This document shows positions 14,217-27,977 of a stretch of 64,000 nucleotides of DNA, one piece after another. The stretch's first letter is position 1; each line of letters starts with the position of its first letter. The notes under the pieces are model-generated. The model had not been told where the DNA came from, searched no databases, and was given only the letters and a program-made list of their open reading frames with translations. The stretch is from the IMG/VR virus record IMGVR_UViG_3300040801_001224, positions 248,001-312,000 of that record; one strand, written 5' to 3'. The translations under genes were made by a program, and so were the position numbers.

Positions 14217-14293
14217 GGGGATGTAGCATAGTTGGTTAATGCGCCGGCCTGTCACGTCGGAGACCGCGAGTTCAAGTCTCGTCATTCCCGCCA
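14217..14293 (+). tRNA. tRNA-Asp(GTC)
   Basis: cloverleaf, CCGGC-CTGTCAC-GTCGG, CCA. Confidence 0.95.
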
Positions 14294-15220: not shown

Positions 15221-15336
15221 ATTTTTATCTTCGCAGACCTGTAACCATATTCTGCCTCCGCCGTCGACGAAAACAGGATGGGCTGTCGGCGCAAGGTTTG
15301 TAGTTATCCTGACCCAAAACTACATCCATTTTCTGT

Positions 15337-15419
15337 CGCAGGCGAGTGGAACGGATATATAAACCATACCGGGCTCATAACCCGTGTGATACTGGGTTCG
15401 ACTCCCAGGTCTGCTACCA
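15337..15419 (+). tRNA. initiator tRNA-fMet(CAT)
   Basis: unpaired C1, GGG/CCC anticodon stem, enlarged D loop. Confidence 0.85.
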
Positions 15420-15421
15420 AT

Positions 15422-15497
15422 GGAGAGTTAGCTTTGTAGGTCAAAGCGTCCGGTTGAAGCCCGGAAGAACCTGGTTCGAATCCTGGACTCTCCACCA
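15422..15497 (+). tRNA. tRNA-Phe(GAA)
   Basis: TCCGG-TTGAAGC-CCGGA, CCA. Confidence 0.9.
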
Positions 15498-17833: not shown

Positions 17834-18697
17834 CAAAGTTAAGCAATGTCGCATATCGACGATAAGGCACTGAAAGGTGTCGAAGGATGGGAATCCAACA
17901 GCCCATCACCAGCAATGGTAGAGGTATGCAAGCCGAGACTCCAATAAGATATCAGTCATGCTGGTATTAGGAGACAAAGGCTCTCTTAGGGAAGTACCCC
18001 CAGGCCAACGGTGAGGGGCGAAAGTAACAGGTGAAGCTGACTACCTAGGGTTCAAAGAGCTAAGTTGACAGAGTCAAAGGGTAGTGTTACTTGTACAAGA
18101 CTTAGCGGTCGAGTGCTGTGACGCAGTCTTATAGGTAGTGTCCACAACCAGGGCATAATATCTAGAAAGACAACTGAAAAGTAACCTTAGCGGGTGAAAC
18201 AGTATTCGGTGTAGCGTATTCTGTACTCCAAAAGAGTATGGACCGTTTTAGAGGCGCACATCGAGGTTGGTTTAAGTTAGCTCAATTGGTTAGAGCAACG
18301 GCATTTTGGAGCCGTGGGTTCTTGGTTCAATTCCAAGACTTACATACAAAAACGCAAAGACGCCTCTACGTAGTAGTAACGATTAAATGACTTAATTGTC
18401 CGTACACTCCGGTGAATACGGAATAGGTTGAACTCGCAAGGTGACGCCTAGTTTGTTTGAAGTCGCACATTGGATTTAGCGATCCTTAACTGCTCGCAAG
18501 GCAGATGGAACACTGACAGCAGAAACGACTACTATAAAAGTGTAAACGCCAGCACTATAAAATGGGCAGTCATGCTTGATACCGAAAGACGAGACCACGG
18601 TCTGTCCAAGGGGAGTAGGGCTTAACTAGCAAGGTCGCACTTGTTAGGTACGAGTTCCGAATGATCAAGTGTAATACGTCCTAACTCTCAGACGTAT
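17834..18697 (+). ncRNA. probable GOLLD giant ncRNA with embedded tRNA-like domain
   Basis: about 860 nt with no ORF over 60 aa, GC-richer, many hairpins, two CTCGCAAGG motifs, 3' GTGTAAT..CTAACTCTCAG hairpin, tRNA-cluster context; family assignment from memory. Confidence 0.7.
18271..18344 (+). tRNA. tRNA-like domain (Gln TTG-like, 8-nt loop, no CCA) inside the giant RNA
   Basis: GCTCAATTGGTTAGAGC D arm, ACGGC/GCCGT, CTTGG-TTCAATT-CCAAG. Confidence 0.7.
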
Positions 18698-19217: not shown

Positions 19218-20048
19218 ATGATAGGAAAATGCTCATGTGTTATATGTAAAAAACAGTACTCTGGAAAGGGGATACACACCCATGCCGACAGAACTCATGG
19301 TGACGAAGAGACAAAAGCCAAATATAGTTCAGGATATAATGGCAGATACAATGATCCAGAACATATGAAAAACTTAAAAAAGTCATTAAAAAAGTTTTAC
19401 GACAAAGAGTTAGGCCCTAAAAAAACATATAATGTTTCTTGCCATAAGTGTGGTAAAGATTTCGATGTAACCGAAAGAGAAAATCAATTTCCGTCTAAAG
19501 AAAAATATTTCTGTTCTGCAACTTGTAGAAATACTAGGTCGCATACAGAAGCCACAAAACAGAAAATAAAAAAATCACTCAGAAAATATAATGGGCCTGA
19601 AAAAATATATGAAAAGACATGCCCTTGGTGTAGTAAAATTCACACTACTAAGGAAAAAAATAAAAAATTCTGCTCGCGAGATTGTGCCACAAAACATAAA
19701 TCGGCAGAAGCCAGGAAACATCGTTCGGCATATAAGAACTACAGGGCAGATTGCGAATTTAGGTTTAATCTAAAAGATTATCCAGAAGAATTTAATTTCG
19801 CACTTATTGAAGAGCATGGATGGTATAGTGCGGCCAATAGAGGAAATAATCTATATGGTGTGAGCCGAGATCACATAGTAAGTGTGAAATACGGCTTTGA
19901 GAATAATATAGATCCAGCTATTATATCTCATCCAGCAAATTGCCAGTTAATGATACATTCGGACAATGTATCAAAATATACGAATAACGATTTAACAATC
20001 GACCAGCTTTTAGAGAAGATCGAAATCTGGAATAATAAATACATTTAA
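19218..20048 (+). mobile_element. HNH-type homing endonuclease gene with Zn-finger modules
   Basis: CxxC repeats, FCSxxC, SRDHIVSV..HPANCQLMIHSDNVSK. Confidence 0.85.
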
Positions 20049-21773: not shown

Positions 21774-21976
21774 TGGATAGAATACCAACCATAAATCATA
21801 CGGACCGTCCGGTTGGCCATGATAAATATGATGACATGCTATTCCGTACTCTAGATGAATTTATGGAAATGCATGATCAAGACTATCTCACAATATCTAG
21901 ATTTGATGGTGAGCTAGTTGCTCGTGTAGGTATTGAAGATTTATTTAAGTACATGAAAGAGTACATGGATCGGTAA
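21773..21976 (+). CDS. hypothetical protein
   Basis: TAATG coupling. Confidence 0.65.
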   Translation: MDRIPTINHTDRPVGHDKYDDMLFRTLDEFMEMHDQDYLTISRFDGELVARVGIEDLFKYMKEYMDR

Positions 21977-22161
21977 TGTTCTTTTTAGAGTTACCTAGAC
22001 CATGGTACACCTATACAGTCAAAGATCTAGGAGTGGTTGAAAGTACTGTTAAAAGGAATAGAAAGATTGTTTTTACGGCCATGATGGAGAGTGATAATCC
22101 TGAATGGTTGAGAAAGTTAAAGCAACAGGAAAGGTTGCTTGAAAGATTAAAGGGTGCGTAA
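21976..22161 (+). CDS. hypothetical protein
   Basis: TAATG coupling; stop lies inside tRNA-Asn. Confidence 0.6.
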   Translation: MFFLELPRPWYTYTVKDLGVVESTVKRNRKIVFTAMMESDNPEWLRKLKQQERLLERLKGA

Positions 22162-22328: not shown

Positions 22329-22751
22329 ATGCAGATATTAACATTCATAGAAGACAGGGAAGCGTATGCCATTGACATAATGCAGGTCAAAGAAATTATA
22401 CGTTTAGATGAAAGTGCTGTGCGTCCTGTGCCTGGTGAAGGACCAGAGCATTATGGTTTAATGTATTTGCGTGAGACACCAATCAGTGTATTTAATGCCA
22501 ACATTGTGTTAGGATTAGCCGACACTGAAATAACAGATGAAACCCGTATTATTATATTGGAAGACGACGGACAGTTATATGGATTTTCATGTGACTCAAT
22601 ACGTGAAATATATCGGGTAGATGAAGGGGATATACAGAACCCTGTGGAACGTAGTAGATTTATACGTGGGGTTATATACTGTAAGGAACGTGATGAAACA
22701 GTCGTAATACTGGATCACGAAAACTTATTTGAATCCTTTTCAGAAAGATAA
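22329..22751 (+). CDS. cheW: chemotaxis coupling protein CheW
   Basis: YAIDIMQVKEII, GLMYLRETPISVF, RIIILE, GFSCDSIREI, FIRGVI, VVILDHENL. Confidence 0.9.
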   Translation: MQILTFIEDREAYAIDIMQVKEIIRLDESAVRPVPGEGPEHYGLMYLRETPISVFNANIVLGLADTEITDETRIIILEDDGQLYGFSCDSIREIYRVDEGDIQNPVERSRFIRGVIYCKERDETVVILDHENLFESFSER

Positions 22752-22752
22752 T

Positions 22753-22809
22753 CGGGGTGTAGCTCAGTCTGGTAGTGTTCACTATTTGAGCAAATTTTTA
22801 CTCCGACCA
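22753..22809 (+). pseudogene. internally deleted tRNA-Pro relic
   Basis: CGGGGTG-TAGCTCAGTCTGGTAG 5' part and TACTCCG-ACCA 3' end; anticodon and T arms absent. Confidence 0.7.
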
Positions 22810-22822
22810 GATAAATATATGT

Positions 22823-23422
22823 ATGGATTATAACGAATACATAAATGAAGATGGCACGTATACCTCTCCGAAAAACGGAAAAGTATATAAGTCAAAAAAA
22901 GCGTTAATATCGCATTTAAACTTTAAGAAATCTAAAACTACTGGATTCGCGGTAGTGAATAACACTAAAGTAAAATGTCAATATTGTGAGAAAGAAACTA
23001 CGCCACCGAATATTAAGAAGCATGAAGAATCATGTTATATGAATCCAAAAAATATTCGAGAATGTGTAGTTTGTGGGACGATCATTAAGAACAAGGAAAG
23101 TAAAGGAACTTGTTCACATGCTTGTTCAAACACGTATTACCGCCATGGTAAAGAAGGTGGAACGCAATATAAAACAGATGAAGAGCTTATATCAAGGAAT
23201 AGATATCAAGACCTTTGTTTTAGGCACCATGGTAAAGAATGTATCGTGTGTGGTGAAAAAAAGATTGTAGCGGCACACCATATAAACCACGACCACAATG
23301 ATAATCGTGTAGAAAATTTAGTTCCTCTATGTCCGACGCATCATCAGTACATACACAGTAGGTACGCAGATGAAGTACAACCATACATAGATGAATTTTT
23401 AGAAAAGTTAAACTCTCTGTAG
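22823..23422 (+). mobile_element. HNH homing endonuclease gene
   Basis: CIVCG..VAAHHINHDHNDNRVENLVPLCPTHH. Confidence 0.92.
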
Positions 23423-23488
23423 TGTAGTCTGGTAACACCCATGCTTTGGGAGCATGTATCTCAAGTTCGAATCTTGACAGAGAGACCA
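23413..23488 (+). tRNA. tRNA-Pro(TGG)
   Basis: CTCTCTG/CAGAGAG, CATGC-TTTGGGA-GCATG; overlaps HNH stop. Confidence 0.93.
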
Positions 23489-23495
23489 AAATTTA

Positions 23496-23572
23496 GGAAC
23501 GGTAGTTCAGTTGGTTAGAATACCGGCCTGTCACGCCGGGGGTCGCGGGTTCGAATCCCGTCCGTTCCGCCA
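23496..23572 (+). tRNA. tRNA-Asp(GTC), second copy
   Basis: canonical cloverleaf, GCCA. Confidence 0.96.
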
Positions 23573-23599: not shown

Positions 23600-23932
23600 A
23601 TGAAATAGACTAAACCAACATTACGTTTGTGGAAATGGGGAGAAGATAGATTTTCCCATCTTGGATACAAAATATTCACAGTGTTTTACTGTAAGTACTT
23701 TGACTTTTATATATTTAAATATCAACCAGGTGCCTATATACCAAAACACAAAGATCCAGGAAAATGGCATTACAGATTAAATTTTATATTTGGTGGTGAT
23801 GGCAAGTTTATATGTAAAGGTGCGTTAATAAACACCAAGTACATAACACTGTTTAGAGCGGACAAGTATTACCATAAGACAACACCAACTTCCACGACAC
23901 GTTATGTTGTAAGTTTTGGTCTAAAGTTTTGA
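23600..23932 (+). CDS. 2OG-Fe(II) oxygenase-like protein with in-frame TAG at codon 3 from the best start (or TTG start at 23627)
   Basis: IPKHKDPG (HxD), HYRLNF, distal H and RYVVSFG; AAGGA-9nt-ATG AAA TAG in frame. Confidence 0.65.
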
Positions 23933-23999
23933 GCCATTGAGGCCAGCCTAAGGATTCTAAACCCAGAAGGCGCCGGTTCAAGTCCGGCATGGCTCACCA
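23931..23999 (+). tRNA. aberrant 69-nt tRNA-like gene, possible CTA anticodon
   Basis: GAGCCAT/ATGGCTC-ACCA and GCCGG-TTCAAGT-CCGGC perfect; tiny D arm; weak anticodon stem around TTCTAAA. Confidence 0.5.
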
Positions 24000-26398: not shown

Positions 26399-26433
26399 TT
26401 GTTTGTATTGAAGTCTAAGTGATAAATAAAAGT

Positions 26434-27186
26434 ATGGACAAACCATATCACTACGTTTATCGCATCACAAATCTCCTGGAGTCAAAACATTATTATGGCT
26501 CCAGGAGTTCGATAAATAAACCACATGAAGATCTTGGAGTTGTGTATTTTTCGTCAAGTAGTGACGAGCAGTTCAAGAAGCTTCAGGTGTCACAGCCAGA
26601 AATATTTAAATATAAGGTAATAAAATCATTTAGTAGCAGAGAGGATGCGATTTTATTTGAAATAAAGTTACATAAAAGATTCAATGTCAGTAGTGAAGAC
26701 AAGTTCTATAACAAAGCAATTCAGTTGACTTCTGGTTTCAGTAACTACGGAAATAAAGAGATAGGAGACAAAATTTCCGACAAAGCCATCGGCCGTTTTA
26801 AGGGGCAAACTTATGAAGAAATTTACGGTGAAAACAAAGCAACAGAACTAAGGAAATTGCGTTCTGAAAACATGAAAAGTCATTTGAAACAAAATCCAGG
26901 AATCAGAGACGGTGAAAAAAATCCAAATTATGGAAAAAAATGGAATGATGAAAAACGAAAAAAAATGTCTAAAAGACAACAGGGTGAAAACCACACTCAA
27001 TATGGTTACTTTTGGGTTACAGATGGCAAAATAAATAAAAAATTACCGCCGAACTCTGAAATACCCAACGGCTTCACAAAGGGAAGAACTTGGCCTATTA
27101 CACAATGTCCTCACTGTGGTTACGAAGGCCGTGGACCAAATATGAAAAGAATACACTTTGATAGATGTGAAGACAAAAATAAATAA
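26434..27186 (+). mobile_element. GIY-YIG-type homing endonuclease gene with NUMOD3-like repeats
   Basis: YHYVYRITN..KHYYGSR, YFSSS, FYNKA, GEKNPNYGKK. Confidence 0.85.
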
Positions 27187-27374: not shown

Positions 27375-27977
27375 ATGAGCATGAATACTCCTAACACCAT
27401 ACTGTGTATGTTTTCCGGTGGATTAGATTCCACTGGCATGCTCTACCGTCTATTAACAGATCCAGAGTATGGTGAGTATAATATACATGTTCACCACGTC
27501 AAGATGTGTAATAGAGAAAACCGCCAACAAGCAGAGTCGATTGCTGTTGAAAACATTATTGGATGGTTTCACAATAACGGCATGTCTAATTTTAGATATA
27601 CTGAAAACACCATTGATTTTGAATTCCTTAAACATGGAAACTTTCCCTGGGATTCGGATGTTACTAATTTTGTTGCCGGTAATATCGTTAAGAATAAGAA
27701 AAATACTTATAAGTATATCGCTTTTGGTAGAACTAAAAACGATACAAACAGGACTATTACGTCATTATCAAATGACATATTAGAAGGCGTCCTGAGAGGC
27801 CGTCCTGTTGAAAAAATATATCCTATAACTGACCTAACAAAGGAAGAGTTATGGGATTACCTTCCTGAGGAATTGCGGGAATACACGTGGTCATGCCGAC
27901 GCCCCAAATATATTGACGGTGTCCCTACAGCATGTGGTCGCTGTGTTCCCTGCAAAGATCTAAAACATATCAAATAA
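27375..27977 (+). CDS. queC: QueC-like PP-loop ATPase
   Basis: MFSGGLDST, WSC.......CGRCVPC zinc site. Confidence 0.8.
   Translation: MSMNTPNTILCMFSGGLDSTGMLYRLLTDPEYGEYNIHVHHVKMCNRENRQQAESIAVENIIGWFHNNGMSNFRYTENTIDFEFLKHGNFPWDSDVTNFVAGNIVKNKKNTYKYIAFGRTKNDTNRTITSLSNDILEGVLRGRPVEKIYPITDLTKEELWDYLPEELREYTWSCRRPKYIDGVPTACGRCVPCKDLKHIK

What the first reader, a model, noticed from the sequence alone, without database searches (positions are those of the whole stretch)
22753..23488. tRNA-Pro replacement cassette: relic, HNH gene, then a recoded tRNA-Pro overlapping the HNH stop
A canonical CGGGGTG-type tRNA-Pro survives only as acceptor plus D arm plus ACCA, while a divergent CTCTCTG-type tRNA-Pro begins inside the last codons of the HNH gene. 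Inference: the nuclease targets the ancestral tRNA-Pro gene and carries a resistant substitute that it cannot lose.
Basis: partly seen in the sequence, partly recalled or inferred. Interest (0 to 1): 0.6.

Follow-up and report, generated by a model that had tools for sequence, protein, structure and literature searches.

The report
Homing nuclease cassette replacing tRNA-Pro
A selfish nuclease gene in a giant phage lies between the wreck of an ordinary proline tRNA gene and a divergent working copy, and its relatives in dozens of other phages show the same layout, which points to a mobile element that disrupts a tRNA gene and supplies its own replacement.

Summary
A 57-nt remnant of a canonical tRNA-Pro lies at 22753-22809. 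It is followed by an intact 199-aa HNH nuclease gene (22823-23422). That gene runs 10 nt into a cloverleaf tRNA-Pro(UGG) at 23413-23488, the only tRNA-Pro in this 328-kb jumbo phage.

Comparison with other phages adds the following:
- The nuclease belongs to a family with 34 distinct lineages in viral metagenomes. 28 of them abut an intact tRNA-Pro (adjacent tRNAs 32/50 Pro against 7/252 elsewhere, p 1e-23).
- About ten lineages carry a 5' tRNA-Pro fragment upstream of the nuclease gene.
- In one lineage the fragments flanking [HNH + tRNA-Pro] rejoin into a tRNA-Pro. In a second, their acceptor strands are complementary. Both indicate insertion inside a resident gene.
- Near-identical cultured phages differ by presence or absence of the homologue.
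- Other nuclease families occupy the same slot.

The best reading is a free-standing homing-endonuclease cassette specialised on tRNA-Pro that displaced the resident gene.

Cleavage specificity and resistance of the resident copy are inferred only. The "cannot lose" argument is weak, because ORF-tRNA overlaps are routine in this genome.

This is a new variant of a known kind.

The parts
22329..22751 (+). Upstream neighbour gene, a CheW-like domain protein. It marks the left limit of the cassette region and ends 1 nt before the relic.
   Evidence: Pfam PF01584 CheW, 8.7e-25. No homologue in cultured phages by tblastn.
22753..22775 (+). Relic, 5' part: intact acceptor 5' strand (CGGGGTG), U8-A9 and D arm of a canonical tRNA-Pro.
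   Evidence: Unique 0-mismatch hit to the tRNA-Pro 5' pattern, 0 expected by chance. BLAST hits genes mostly annotated tRNA-Pro in 83 phage records. 20/21 identity to XbC2 tRNA-Pro no. 2.
22776..22798 (+). Relic, middle part: degenerate remains of the D-stem 3' strand and anticodon arm. The variable loop and T arm are deleted.
   Evidence: Gapped alignment to XbC2 and BF tRNA-Pro genes (A3). ARAGORN and Rfam do not call a tRNA here.
22799..22809 (+). Relic, 3' part: TACTCCGACCA, i.e. acceptor 3' strand, A73 and CCA.
   Evidence: Pairs 7/7 with 22753-22759 (fold -15.8 kcal/mol, z -2.07). Identical to the last 11 nt of a 28-nt tRNA-Pro 3' half found beside the cassette in 9 viral contigs.
22811..22825 (+). 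Gene-start motif ATAAATA-N3-GTATG, ending in the HNH start codon. It is probably this phage's promoter or initiation signal.
   Evidence: 13 matches with at most 1 mismatch in the window against 0.75 expected; at least five other matches also end on the start codon of a listed ORF. The same box precedes the HNH gene in L006, L008, L011, L013 and L016.
22823..23422 (+). HNH endonuclease gene, 199 aa: three small beta-beta-alpha or zinc modules followed by the nuclease core.
   Evidence: ORF. phrog_1271, 3.6e-13. 45-51% identity over the full length to L006-L013. AlphaFold2 model with pLDDT 89.
23234..23356 (+). Catalytic HNH core (residues 138-178): C140, C143, H152, H153, N161, N165, C170, H173, H174, H178.
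   Evidence: All these residues except N161 are invariant, and N161 is at least 90% conserved, in the 28-sequence alignment A2. This part aligns to the IscB HNH domain in PDB. The Foldseek hits to HNH nucleases McrA, Cap5 and IscB are attributed to it.
23413..23488 (+). Functional-looking tRNA-Pro(UGG) with acceptor CTCTCTG/CAGAGAG and a non-canonical D-arm sequence. It is the only tRNA-Pro in the genome.
   Evidence: ARAGORN. Rfam tRNA 60.3 bits. Cloverleaf fold. C1-G72, A73, G35-G36 and CCA read directly from the sequence.
23413..23422 (+). 10-nt overlap between the HNH gene and the tRNA. The HNH stop TAG is tRNA positions 8-10, so the RNase P site lies inside codon 197.
   Evidence: Sequence. 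The same kind of junction occurs in 21 of 28 family lineages.
23496..23572 (+). tRNA-Asp(GUC), the right-hand neighbour, 7 nt after the tRNA-Pro. It is a second and divergent Asp gene in this genome.
   Evidence: ARAGORN. 54/77 identical to the other tRNA-Asp at 14217. 94.5% identical to the tRNA-Asp of an Acinetobacter phage.

Best explanation
The region is a free-standing HNH homing-endonuclease cassette from a family that specialises on phage tRNA-Pro genes.

Shown:
- An intact nuclease gene lies between the decayed remains of a canonical tRNA-Pro and a divergent but structurally sound tRNA-Pro(UGG), which is the genome's only proline tRNA.
- The same order (5' tRNA-Pro fragment or whole gene, then HNH, then intact tRNA-Pro whose first bases hold the HNH stop codon) recurs in the nuclease's closest relatives and in many more distant ones.
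- In one lineage (L043/L044) the two halves of a resident tRNA-Pro flank [HNH + tRNA-Pro] and rejoin into a recognisable gene. In a second (L008) the flanking fragments have 7/7 complementary acceptor strands.

Inferred:
- The enzyme nicks or cuts tRNA-Pro genes of phages that lack it, probably near the anticodon-stem/variable-loop region, where the resident fragments end.
- Repair copies in the nuclease gene together with the adjacent tRNA-Pro allele, which is not a substrate.
- The resident gene, now redundant or broken, decays to the relic.

Also inferred: RNase P maturation of the tRNA cuts the HNH message upstream of its stop codon and so limits nuclease expression. The same was proposed for T4 SegB.
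For: Window anatomy.

Nuclease: phrog_1271 at 3.6e-13; catalytic and zinc residues conserved (all but N161 invariant) in 28 homologues; confident model of zinc-finger-like modules plus HNH core.

Association with tRNA-Pro:
- 28 of 34 lineages (80% identity clusters) have an intact tRNA-Pro beside the ORF. Adjacent tRNAs are Pro in 32/50 cases against 7/252 for the other tRNAs of the same loci (odds ratio 62, p 1e-23).
- An independent collection repeats this: all 7 best hits in MAG contigs have an adjacent tRNA-Pro.
- Cultured relatives BF, pEa_SNUABM_12 and XbC2 show the same.

Relics:
- 5' fragments lie upstream of the HNH gene in about ten lineages, and 3' fragments lie after the intact tRNA-Pro in about five.
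- The L043 halves rejoin into an ARAGORN tRNA-Pro. The L008 halves have 7/7 complementary acceptor strands.

Phylogeny: the window's HNH falls in a 99/95-supported clade whose other five members (L006, L008, L009, L011, L013) all have HNH followed by Pro. Their flanking genes differ.

Mobility:
- The homologue is present in BF, SNUABM_12 and SNUABM_49 but absent from 94-99% identical SNUABM_19, 44, 50 and 47. In SNUABM_19, the one inspected, the block between conserved flanks reads Pro-Pro-Pro-Val; the other three are annotated likewise.
- An HNH+NUMOD1 gene and an Endonuclease VII gene occupy the same slot 5' of tRNA-Pro in other contigs.

Not a local duplicate: the relic scores below the shuffle mean against the neighbouring intact gene.

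D-arm contrast: fragments keep the canonical TAGCKCAG D-arm in 8 of 10 cases; intact tRNA-Pro genes in HNH-bearing loci do so in 2 of 39.
Against: - There is no cleavage or inheritance experiment, and no HNH-less relative of this phage. Single-protein scans found nothing close. Metagenome contigs show no alternative allele, at a depth of only 2-5.
- In the window the relic keeps its own 3' acceptor end upstream of the HNH gene. The resident gene was therefore not simply split here. It may have been a whole upstream copy that later lost its middle, as in the Pro-HNH-Pro loci L013 and L014.
- BF, XbC2 and L028 keep a canonical-type tRNA-Pro beside the nuclease gene.
- HNH-less relatives also carry two or three different tRNA-Pro genes at this site. 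tRNA-Pro multiplicity therefore does not need this nuclease.
- The lineages are not phylogenetically independent, and most fragments were called by eye with partial nhmmer support.
Confidence: 0.68

Rival explanations
1. Coincidental neighbours. The phage once had two tRNA-Pro genes, as many jumbo phages do. One decayed because it was redundant, and an unrelated selfish HNH gene happened to land in the spacer between them. The nuclease has no particular relation to tRNA-Pro.
For: HNH-less relatives hold two or three divergent tRNA-Pro genes at one site (SNUABM_19, CBB). tRNA pseudogenes are common in phage tRNA arrays. tRNA arrays attract many nuclease genes (PMC13096335, PMC6409571).
Against: The isotype bias is extreme (32/50 against 7/252) and is repeated in a second collection. 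Fragment-HNH-Pro recurs across lineages with only 35-50% protein identity and different flanks. The two halves of one tRNA-Pro flank the cassette in L043, and fragments with complementary acceptor strands flank it in L008.
Confidence: 0.12
2. Nuclease-driven segmental amplification. As shown for T4/T6 SegB, breaks made by the nuclease duplicated the adjacent tRNA gene. The copies then diverged, perhaps under pressure from a host tRNA-directed defence, and one copy died.
For: SegB amplifies a tRNA-containing segment to escape Septu (PMC13096335). Tandem Pro-Pro and [Pro-His]-HNH-[Pro-His] arrangements occur in some loci (L016, L033, L035).
Against: The relic and the intact gene are unrelated beyond generic tRNA features (score 18.5, below the shuffle mean). 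Where both copies are intact (L013, L014) they differ in the acceptor, D and anticodon stems. No tandem repeat includes the HNH gene in the window.
Confidence: 0.08
3. The 'relic' is a working tRNA-like element, not debris. It would be an acceptor-stem mini-structure with an ACCA tail, kept as a processing site that frees the 5' end of the HNH message, or as a homology arm that the mobile element needs for homing. This can be true together with the main explanation.
For: The acceptor stem still pairs 7/7 and ACCA is intact although the middle is wrecked; fold z is -2.07. A 28-nt tRNA-Pro 3' half next to the cassette is letter-perfect in 9 contigs whose adjacent intact tRNA-Pro genes and flanks differ. 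The relic's last 11 nt equal the end of that 28-mer.
Against: The T arm that RNase P and CCA enzymes use is missing. Fragments in other loci end at very different positions, from tRNA position 10 to 45. The linker that would pair with the 28-mer is not conserved for pairing. 7 of 200 shuffles fold as well.
Confidence: 0.1
4. A tRNA-Pro gene interrupted by a self-splicing intron that encodes the HNH nuclease, in the manner of I-HmuI or cyanobacterial tRNA introns.
For: HNH genes often live in group I introns, and bacterial tRNA genes host such introns in the anticodon loop. The fragments end near the anticodon or variable region.
Against: No intron family matched in the window region at E up to 10, nor in four related loci at E up to 0.1. 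The sequence after the HNH gene is a complete tRNA with its own 5' half, not a 3' exon. In the window the relic already carries its own 3' end.
Confidence: 0.02

Closest known systems
T4 SegB, a free-standing homing endonuclease inside the T4 tRNA gene cluster (PMC2330249; PMC13096335)
   Same: It is a selfish nuclease gene embedded in a phage tRNA array. Its targets are tRNA genes of related phages. It drives inheritance of the adjacent tRNA region. tRNA maturation was proposed to sever its ORF from its stop codon and so limit expression.
   Different: SegB is GIY-YIG, not HNH. It recognises the universal T-psi-C motif and shows no isotype preference, whereas this family is tied to tRNA-Pro. 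No displaced target-gene fragments or replacement copy were described for SegB.
[quoted passage not shown] 2004, as cited in PMC2330249 and PMC5714182)
   Same: They belong to the HNH superfamily and lie between tRNA genes. Control of their expression by tRNA processing has been suggested.
   Different: tblastn of the window protein against 50,697 phage records gave only five hits, none from T5 or its relatives. I could not read the original paper, so their targets are not compared.
Mitochondrial mobile endonuclease ORFs that create 'hybrid genes' (Allomyces atp6, Paquin et al. 1994; Glomus atp6, atp9, cox2 and nad3, PMC3630166)
   Same: The logic is the same. An endonuclease element inserts into a needed gene and brings a foreign replacement for the part it displaces. 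The native part is left next to it as a dead relic.
   Different: Those are protein-coding genes in organelles. Only the C-terminal portion is replaced, in frame, and the endonucleases are described there only as mobile-ORF endonucleases. Here a whole tRNA gene is supplied, in a phage, by an HNH enzyme.
Free-standing T-even endonucleases whose target lies in the neighbouring conserved gene (SegF, SegG, MobE; review PMC2988022, not opened here; stated from general knowledge)
   Same: The nuclease gene sits beside its target gene. The allele in the nuclease-bearing genome is immune through sequence differences and is co-converted into recipients.
   Different: In those cases the recipient allele is replaced cleanly through long flanking homology. 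Here fragments of the old gene remain, which suggests invasion across phages that share little beyond the tRNA itself.

Membership tests
HNH (His-Me finger) endonuclease superfamily | Beta-beta-alpha-metal core with a catalytic His, conserved Asn residues and Cys/His zinc ligands | tested here: met
   C140, C143, H152, H153, N165, C170, H173, H174 and H178 are invariant and N161 is at least 90% conserved in 28 homologues. phrog_1271 at 3.6e-13. Pfam HNH_3 is below its cut-off (17.6 bits against 24.8). Model strands 150-153 and 166-169 and helix 171-177. Foldseek hits HNH nucleases, including McrA 6ghc_B at rmsd 2.8 over 82 columns.
Free-standing homing endonuclease gene | The nuclease ORF is not inside an intron or intein | tested here: met
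   No intron family matched in the window region or in four related loci. The ORF stands alone between RNA genes.
Free-standing homing endonuclease gene | Sporadic presence or absence among otherwise near-identical genomes | tested here: inconclusive
   Met for the homologue in Eneladusvirus BF strains: present in 3, absent in 4, at 94-99% identity. No close relative of the window's own phage was available.
Free-standing homing endonuclease gene | Site-specific cleavage of the allele that lacks the gene, and immunity of the carrier allele | not testable with these tools
   Only indirect: tRNA-Pro adjacency, broken canonical genes and the D-arm contrast, which has three exceptions.
Free-standing homing endonuclease gene | Nuclease-dependent biased inheritance with co-conversion of flanks in mixed infection | not testable with these tools
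   This needs crosses. BF x pEa_SNUABM_19 would be a natural pair.
SegB-type tRNA-cluster endonuclease | GIY-YIG catalytic domain | tested here: not met
   Pfam and PHROGs give HNH only.
SegB-type tRNA-cluster endonuclease | Association with tRNA genes of any isotype | tested here: not met
   The association here is with tRNA-Pro. SegB shows no isotype preference (PMC13096335).
Intron-encoded HNH endonuclease in a tRNA gene | Ribozyme core, with 5' and 3' exons that splice into one tRNA | tested here: not met
   No group I or II match. The downstream element is a complete tRNA.
Functional bacterial-type tRNA-Pro (23413-23488) | Cloverleaf, anticodon UGG with G35-G36, C1-G72 and A73. Identity elements for bacterial ProRS are taken from general knowledge. 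| tested here: met
   ARAGORN. Rfam 60.3 bits. Fold. Bases read. Charging and use are not testable here.
Functional tRNA (relic 22753-22809) | A complete cloverleaf recognised by tRNA models | tested here: not met
   Not called by ARAGORN, nor by Rfam at E up to 10. T arm and variable loop are absent and the anticodon loop is mutated.

The most novel reading that the evidence does not exclude
This HNH family practises 'replacement homing'. Instead of hiding in an intron or a spacer, the element breaks a tRNA-Pro gene and carries a complete, nuclease-proof tRNA-Pro as payload. The only homology it needs is the tRNA itself, so it can jump between unrelated phages. Repeated invasions, joined by other nuclease families at the same slot, would then drive the turnover and the odd acceptor and D-arm sequences of phage tRNA-Pro genes. 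The letter-perfect tRNA halves kept beside the cassette would serve as its portable homology arms.
Probability: 0.35. Interest if true: 0.75.

Novelty: new variant of a known kind. Interest (0 to 1): 0.62.

Why it matters
Homing endonucleases are thought to avoid harming their host in one of two ways: by sitting in self-splicing introns or inteins, or in spacers next to an immune allele. A phage element that disrupts a tRNA gene and supplies a whole substitute would be a third solution. So far that solution is documented only for parts of protein genes in fungal mitochondria.

It would also give a concrete, testable cause for two puzzles of phage tRNA arrays. One is why they carry several divergent copies of one isoacceptor. 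The other is why they are littered with tRNA fragments.

An isotype-specific nuclease built from small zinc-finger-like modules and an HNH core is also a compact natural example of modular DNA targeting.

A cultured test system exists: Eneladusvirus BF strains with and without the gene.

Tried and rejected
- Single-protein scans of viral contigs with the HNH and CheW-like proteins found no close relative of this phage. tblastn of the CheW-like protein against cultured phages found nothing. The empty site of this phage could therefore not be examined.
- An exact 36-mer search for an uninterrupted version of the split L043 tRNA-Pro returned only the two contigs that carry the cassette.
- Sequencing runs: three DNA runs of one microbial-mat sample hold the phage at depth 2-5. 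Contigs confirm the CheW/relic/HNH junction but show no joints or alternative allele, and there is no RNA run.
- PDB sequence search gave only a marginal IscB HNH hit (E 0.058). Foldseek on the whole model was weak (best E 0.012), presumably because the small modules are flexibly linked.
- Intron hypothesis: no ribozyme family matched.
- Second paralogue: ORF 19218-20048 has a faint phrog_1271 hit but no significant similarity to the HNH protein.
- The sigma-70 promoter and terminator scan of the region was at background level.
- I considered a Mantel test of HNH against tRNA-Pro distances and dropped it, because vertical co-inheritance would give the same signal as co-transfer.
- I first read the D arm as the resistance determinant. 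This was downgraded after BF, XbC2 and L028 were seen to keep canonical D arms next to the nuclease gene.
- The costly whole-database protein searches were not used, because the family scans and locus scans had already placed the protein.
Full report
WHAT IS IN THE WINDOW

The window is bases 248001-312000 of a 328,096-bp viral contig with direct terminal repeats. The contig comes from a microbial-mat metagenome. ARAGORN finds 26 tRNA genes in the window and none in the rest of the genome. Exactly one of them is a tRNA-Pro.

The finding's coordinates are exact.
- From 22753 to 22809 lies a 57-nt remnant of a tRNA-Pro.
- Thirteen bases later an ORF of 199 codons starts (22823-23422).
- A cloverleaf tRNA-Pro(UGG) occupies 23413-23488 (Rfam 60.3 bits). 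The ORF's stop codon TAG is tRNA positions 8-10, so the two genes share 10 nt.
- A tRNA-Asp follows 7 nt later.

THE RELIC

- Its first 23 nt (acceptor strand CGGGGTG, U8-A9, D arm) are the only place in 64 kb that matches a degenerate tRNA-Pro 5' pattern within three mismatches. They match it perfectly, and none is expected by chance.
- BLAST of the stretch finds genes mostly annotated tRNA-Pro in 83 phage records.
- A gapped alignment to the tRNA-Pro immediately upstream of the homologous nuclease gene in Xanthomonas phage XbC2 scores 53, against 22.9 +/- 3.4 for shuffles.
- The alignment shows a 2-nt loss in the D stem, a mutated anticodon arm, loss of the variable loop and T arm, and a preserved 3' end, TACTCCGACCA.
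- That end still pairs 7/7 with the 5' strand.
- Against the intact tRNA-Pro 600 nt downstream the relic scores 18.5, below the shuffle mean. It is therefore not a decayed copy of its neighbour.
- Neither ARAGORN nor Rfam calls it a tRNA.

THE NUCLEASE

- Pfam gives only sub-threshold HNH_3 and treble-clef hits. PHROGs gives phrog_1271 'HNH endonuclease' at 3.6e-13.
- In an alignment of 28 homologues the zinc ligands and catalytic residues are conserved: C81, C84, C97, C101, C140, C143, H152, H153, N165, C170, H173, H174 and H178 are invariant and N161 is at least 90% conserved.
- An AlphaFold2 model (pLDDT 89) shows three small beta-beta-alpha or zinc modules followed by the HNH core.
- Foldseek weakly likens the whole model to C2H2 zinc-finger arrays on DNA. 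It also hits HNH nucleases: McrA (rmsd 2.8 over 82 columns), Cap5 and IscB.
- The gene looks intact and of normal length for its clade (about 180-197 aa).

THE FAMILY IS TIED TO tRNA-Pro

- tblastn against cultured phages finds the C-terminal 115 residues in Serratia phage BF, Erwinia phages pEa_SNUABM_12 and 49, and Xanthomonas phage XbC2. In each case the match lies directly downstream of two tRNA-Pro(TGG) genes.
- A profile scan of IMG/VR returned 49 loci. Together with the window they fall into 34 clusters at 80% identity.
- 28 of the 34 have an intact tRNA-Pro beside the ORF.
- Of the tRNAs flanking the ORF, 32 of 50 are Pro, against 7 of 252 for all other tRNAs in the same loci (odds ratio 62, Fisher p 1e-23).
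- A separate scan of prokaryote genome bins repeats this. All seven best hits have an adjacent tRNA-Pro.
- These lineages are not independent in the phylogenetic sense. However, they span 35-50% protein identity and have different flanking genes.

BROKEN RESIDENT GENES AROUND THE CASSETTE

In the window's own clade (99/95 support with L006, L008, L009, L011 and L013) the order is always HNH followed by tRNA-Pro, while the upstream neighbour varies: Ala, Gln, Ser, Pro, or here a CheW-like gene.

- In about ten lineages a 5' piece of a tRNA-Pro lies just upstream of the HNH gene (window, L006/7, L008, L016, L032, L035/36, L040, L041, L043/44, L046; partial nhmmer support).
- In about five lineages a 3' piece follows the intact tRNA-Pro (L006/7, L008, L011, L017, L043/44).
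- In L043 the two pieces rejoin into a tRNA-Pro that ARAGORN recognises.
- In L008 their acceptor strands are 7/7 complementary.
- The longest 5' pieces end at tRNA positions 37-45 and the 3' pieces begin near 47-49. The insertion point is therefore around the 3' side of the anticodon stem and the variable loop.
- L013 and L014 carry whole, mutually dissimilar tRNA-Pro genes on both sides.

The window resembles that last state after the upstream copy lost its middle, because its relic keeps its own 3' end. I cannot tell whether the relic's two ends come from one gene or from a recombinant.

MOBILITY

- Within the species Eneladusvirus BF, three genomes carry the HNH gene. Four others lack it at 94-99% identity over the matching flanks. 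In pEa_SNUABM_19, the one inspected, the block between the conserved flanking ORFs reads Pro-Pro-Pro-Val; the other three are annotated likewise.
- Related Yersinia and Pectobacterium phages hold yet other combinations of tRNA-Pro genes. In one of them a NUMOD3/HTH protein lies at the site.
- A 28-nt tRNA-Pro 3' half, the L006 fragment, occurs letter-perfect in nine viral contigs. It always lies 10 nt after an intact tRNA-Pro.
- Upstream of that tRNA-Pro sits this HNH family (four contigs), an unrelated HNH+NUMOD1 gene (two), an Endonuclease VII gene (PF02945, 6.5e-18; one), or no nuclease (two).
- The slot 5' of tRNA-Pro is thus a landing pad for several nuclease families.
- The window relic's last 11 nt equal the end of this 28-mer.

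THE OVERLAP

- In 21 of 28 lineages the HNH ORF ends inside the downstream tRNA, most often 10 or 15 nt in, and often at the conserved U8-A9-G10 read as TAG.
- The downstream tRNA may be Lys, Ile, Thr or Asn instead of Pro.
- In this window 3 of the 6 ORF-to-tRNA junctions overlap. One is a 61-codon non-nuclease ORF that runs 10 nt into tRNA-Asn.
- The overlap is therefore a general consequence of tight packing in these arrays. It is not a device that chains this nuclease to this tRNA.
- Its likely effect is that RNase P cleavage at 23412/23413 removes the last codons and the stop of the HNH message. This is an inference. It parallels what was proposed for T4 SegB and the T5 enzymes (PMC2330249).
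- The HNH start codon is preceded by ATAAATA-N3-GTATG. This motif is enriched 13 to 0.75 in the window, at least five other matches end on the start codon of a listed ORF, and it is shared with the closest HNH loci. It is probably the phage's own promoter or initiation signal.

WHAT MIGHT MAKE THE INTACT COPY RESISTANT

- Fragments keep the common D-arm sequence TAGCKCAG in 8 of 10 cases. Intact tRNA-Pro genes in HNH-bearing loci have it in 2 of 39, and the partners of the fragments in 0 of 10.
- In the window's clade and the neighbouring L015-L017 group many intact copies share an unusual C-U-C start of the acceptor stem while keeping C1-G72 and A73.
- This fits a nuclease that reads the canonical gene and an escape allele that travels with it.
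- However, BF, XbC2 and L028 (BF and L028 forming one HNH clade) keep a canonical-type tRNA-Pro beside the gene.
- The contrast is therefore suggestive only.

MECHANISM AND RIVALS

My best account is a free-standing homing endonuclease that attacks tRNA-Pro genes and is inherited together with an immune tRNA-Pro, which replaces the resident gene (confidence about 0.68 for the cassette reading). I put the specific claim about cleavage and resistance at about 0.5.

- Coincidental neighbours (0.12) is contradicted by the isotype bias and by the split genes.
- SegB-like tandem amplification (0.08) is contradicted by the dissimilarity of the copies.
- A functional tRNA-like role for the relic (0.10) is possible and not exclusive.
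- An intron (0.02) is excluded.

COMPARISON WITH WHAT IS KNOWN

- Nuclease genes inside phage tRNA arrays are established. T4 SegB cuts the T-psi-C motif of tRNA genes, and its family is associated with tRNAs of all isotypes (PMC2330249, PMC13096335). T5 encodes HNH enzymes in its tRNA region. An HNH gene in mycobacteriophage arrays has been linked to tRNA repertoire diversity (PMC6409571).
- Elements that break a gene and bring a replacement for the displaced part, leaving a native relic, are known from fungal mitochondria (PMC3630166 and Paquin et al. 1994, cited there).
- In six full-text searches I found no description of an HNH family specific for one tRNA isotype, or of a phage element that supplies a whole substitute tRNA. 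Absence from that library is not proof.
- I therefore class this as a new variant of a known kind.

LIMITS

- No experiment was possible, and there is no close relative of this phage.
- Most fragment calls were made by inspection.
- The motif test is a simple regular expression.
- The metagenomic contigs are of unknown relatedness.

Noticed in passing
window 23931-23996 (+): A tRNA-like sequence with a perfect 7-bp acceptor stem, a good T arm and an encoded CCA, but a reduced D arm. Rfam tRNA scores 29.5 bits (threshold 29) and ARAGORN does not call it. The anticodon loop appears to read CUA, which would make it an amber-suppressor-type tRNA. It begins 2 nt before the end of ORF 23627-23932. 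TAG is used as a stop codon nearby, including by the HNH gene.
   Followed up: partly
window 18270-18347 (+): ARAGORN reports a tRNA with an 8-nt anticodon loop and a four-base 'anticodon' tttg, isotype undetermined. It could be a frameshift-suppressor-like tRNA or a damaged Gln or Lys gene.
   Followed up: no
window 22329-22751 (+): A full-length CheW-like domain protein (PF01584, 8.7e-25) encoded in a phage tRNA region. It has no homologue in 50,697 cultured phage records. A chemotaxis-coupling domain is unusual in a virus.
   Followed up: partly
window 26419-27186 and 27375-27977 (+): A second homing-endonuclease-like gene (phrog_314, 1.1e-21). Its N-terminal 110 residues also resemble a PP-loop enzyme (phrog_447). 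It lies directly before a QueC-like gene (phrog_1550, 1e-23), which ends 4 nt before tRNA-Arg(ACG). This may be a nuclease inserted into or fused with a PP-loop gene.
   Followed up: no
window-wide, e.g. 15505, 17385, 19206, 22811, 26422, 28646: The motif ATAAATA-N3-GTATG (at most 1 mismatch) occurs 13 times against 0.75 expected. Six matches, including the one at the HNH gene, end exactly on the start codon of a listed ORF, with no Shine-Dalgarno sequence in between. It looks like a phage-specific promoter or start signal. The strict T4 late box TATAAATA is not enriched (8 against 6).
   Followed up: partly
window 21976-22161 / tRNA-Asn 22152; 15278-15439 / tRNA-Phe 15422: Other ORFs also end 10 and 18 nt inside the next tRNA gene. 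Stop codons lying inside the 5' part of tRNAs are a habit of this genome.
   Followed up: yes
window 14217-14293 and 23496-23572: Two tRNA-Asp(GUC) genes that are only 54/77 identical. The one beside the cassette is 94.5% identical to the tRNA-Asp of Acinetobacter phage MD-2021a. It might have arrived with neighbouring DNA.
   Followed up: partly
G000:C1:124149-124495 (outside the window): ARAGORN calls a permuted tmRNA-like gene with the tag peptide ENDEIFALAA in the phage genome. It was not verified with Rfam. It would be relevant if tRNA processing really creates stop-less messages.
   Followed up: no
L060-L068 (IMG/VR contigs), e.g. L062:11417-11444: A 28-nt tRNA-Pro 3' half (T arm, acceptor strand, ACCA) is letter-perfect in nine contigs. 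It always lies 10 nt after an intact tRNA-Pro, although those tRNA genes and the outer flanks differ. It is more conserved than the functional gene beside it. Why is unexplained.
   Followed up: partly
L057:1191-1505 (Erwinia phage pEa_SNUABM_19) compared with L002:2590-2750 (Serratia phage BF): Near-identical phages carry different sets of two or three tRNA-Pro(UGG) genes. Some genes share an acceptor stem but have different bodies (mosaic tRNAs). This suggests recombination inside tRNA genes at this hot spot.
   Followed up: partly
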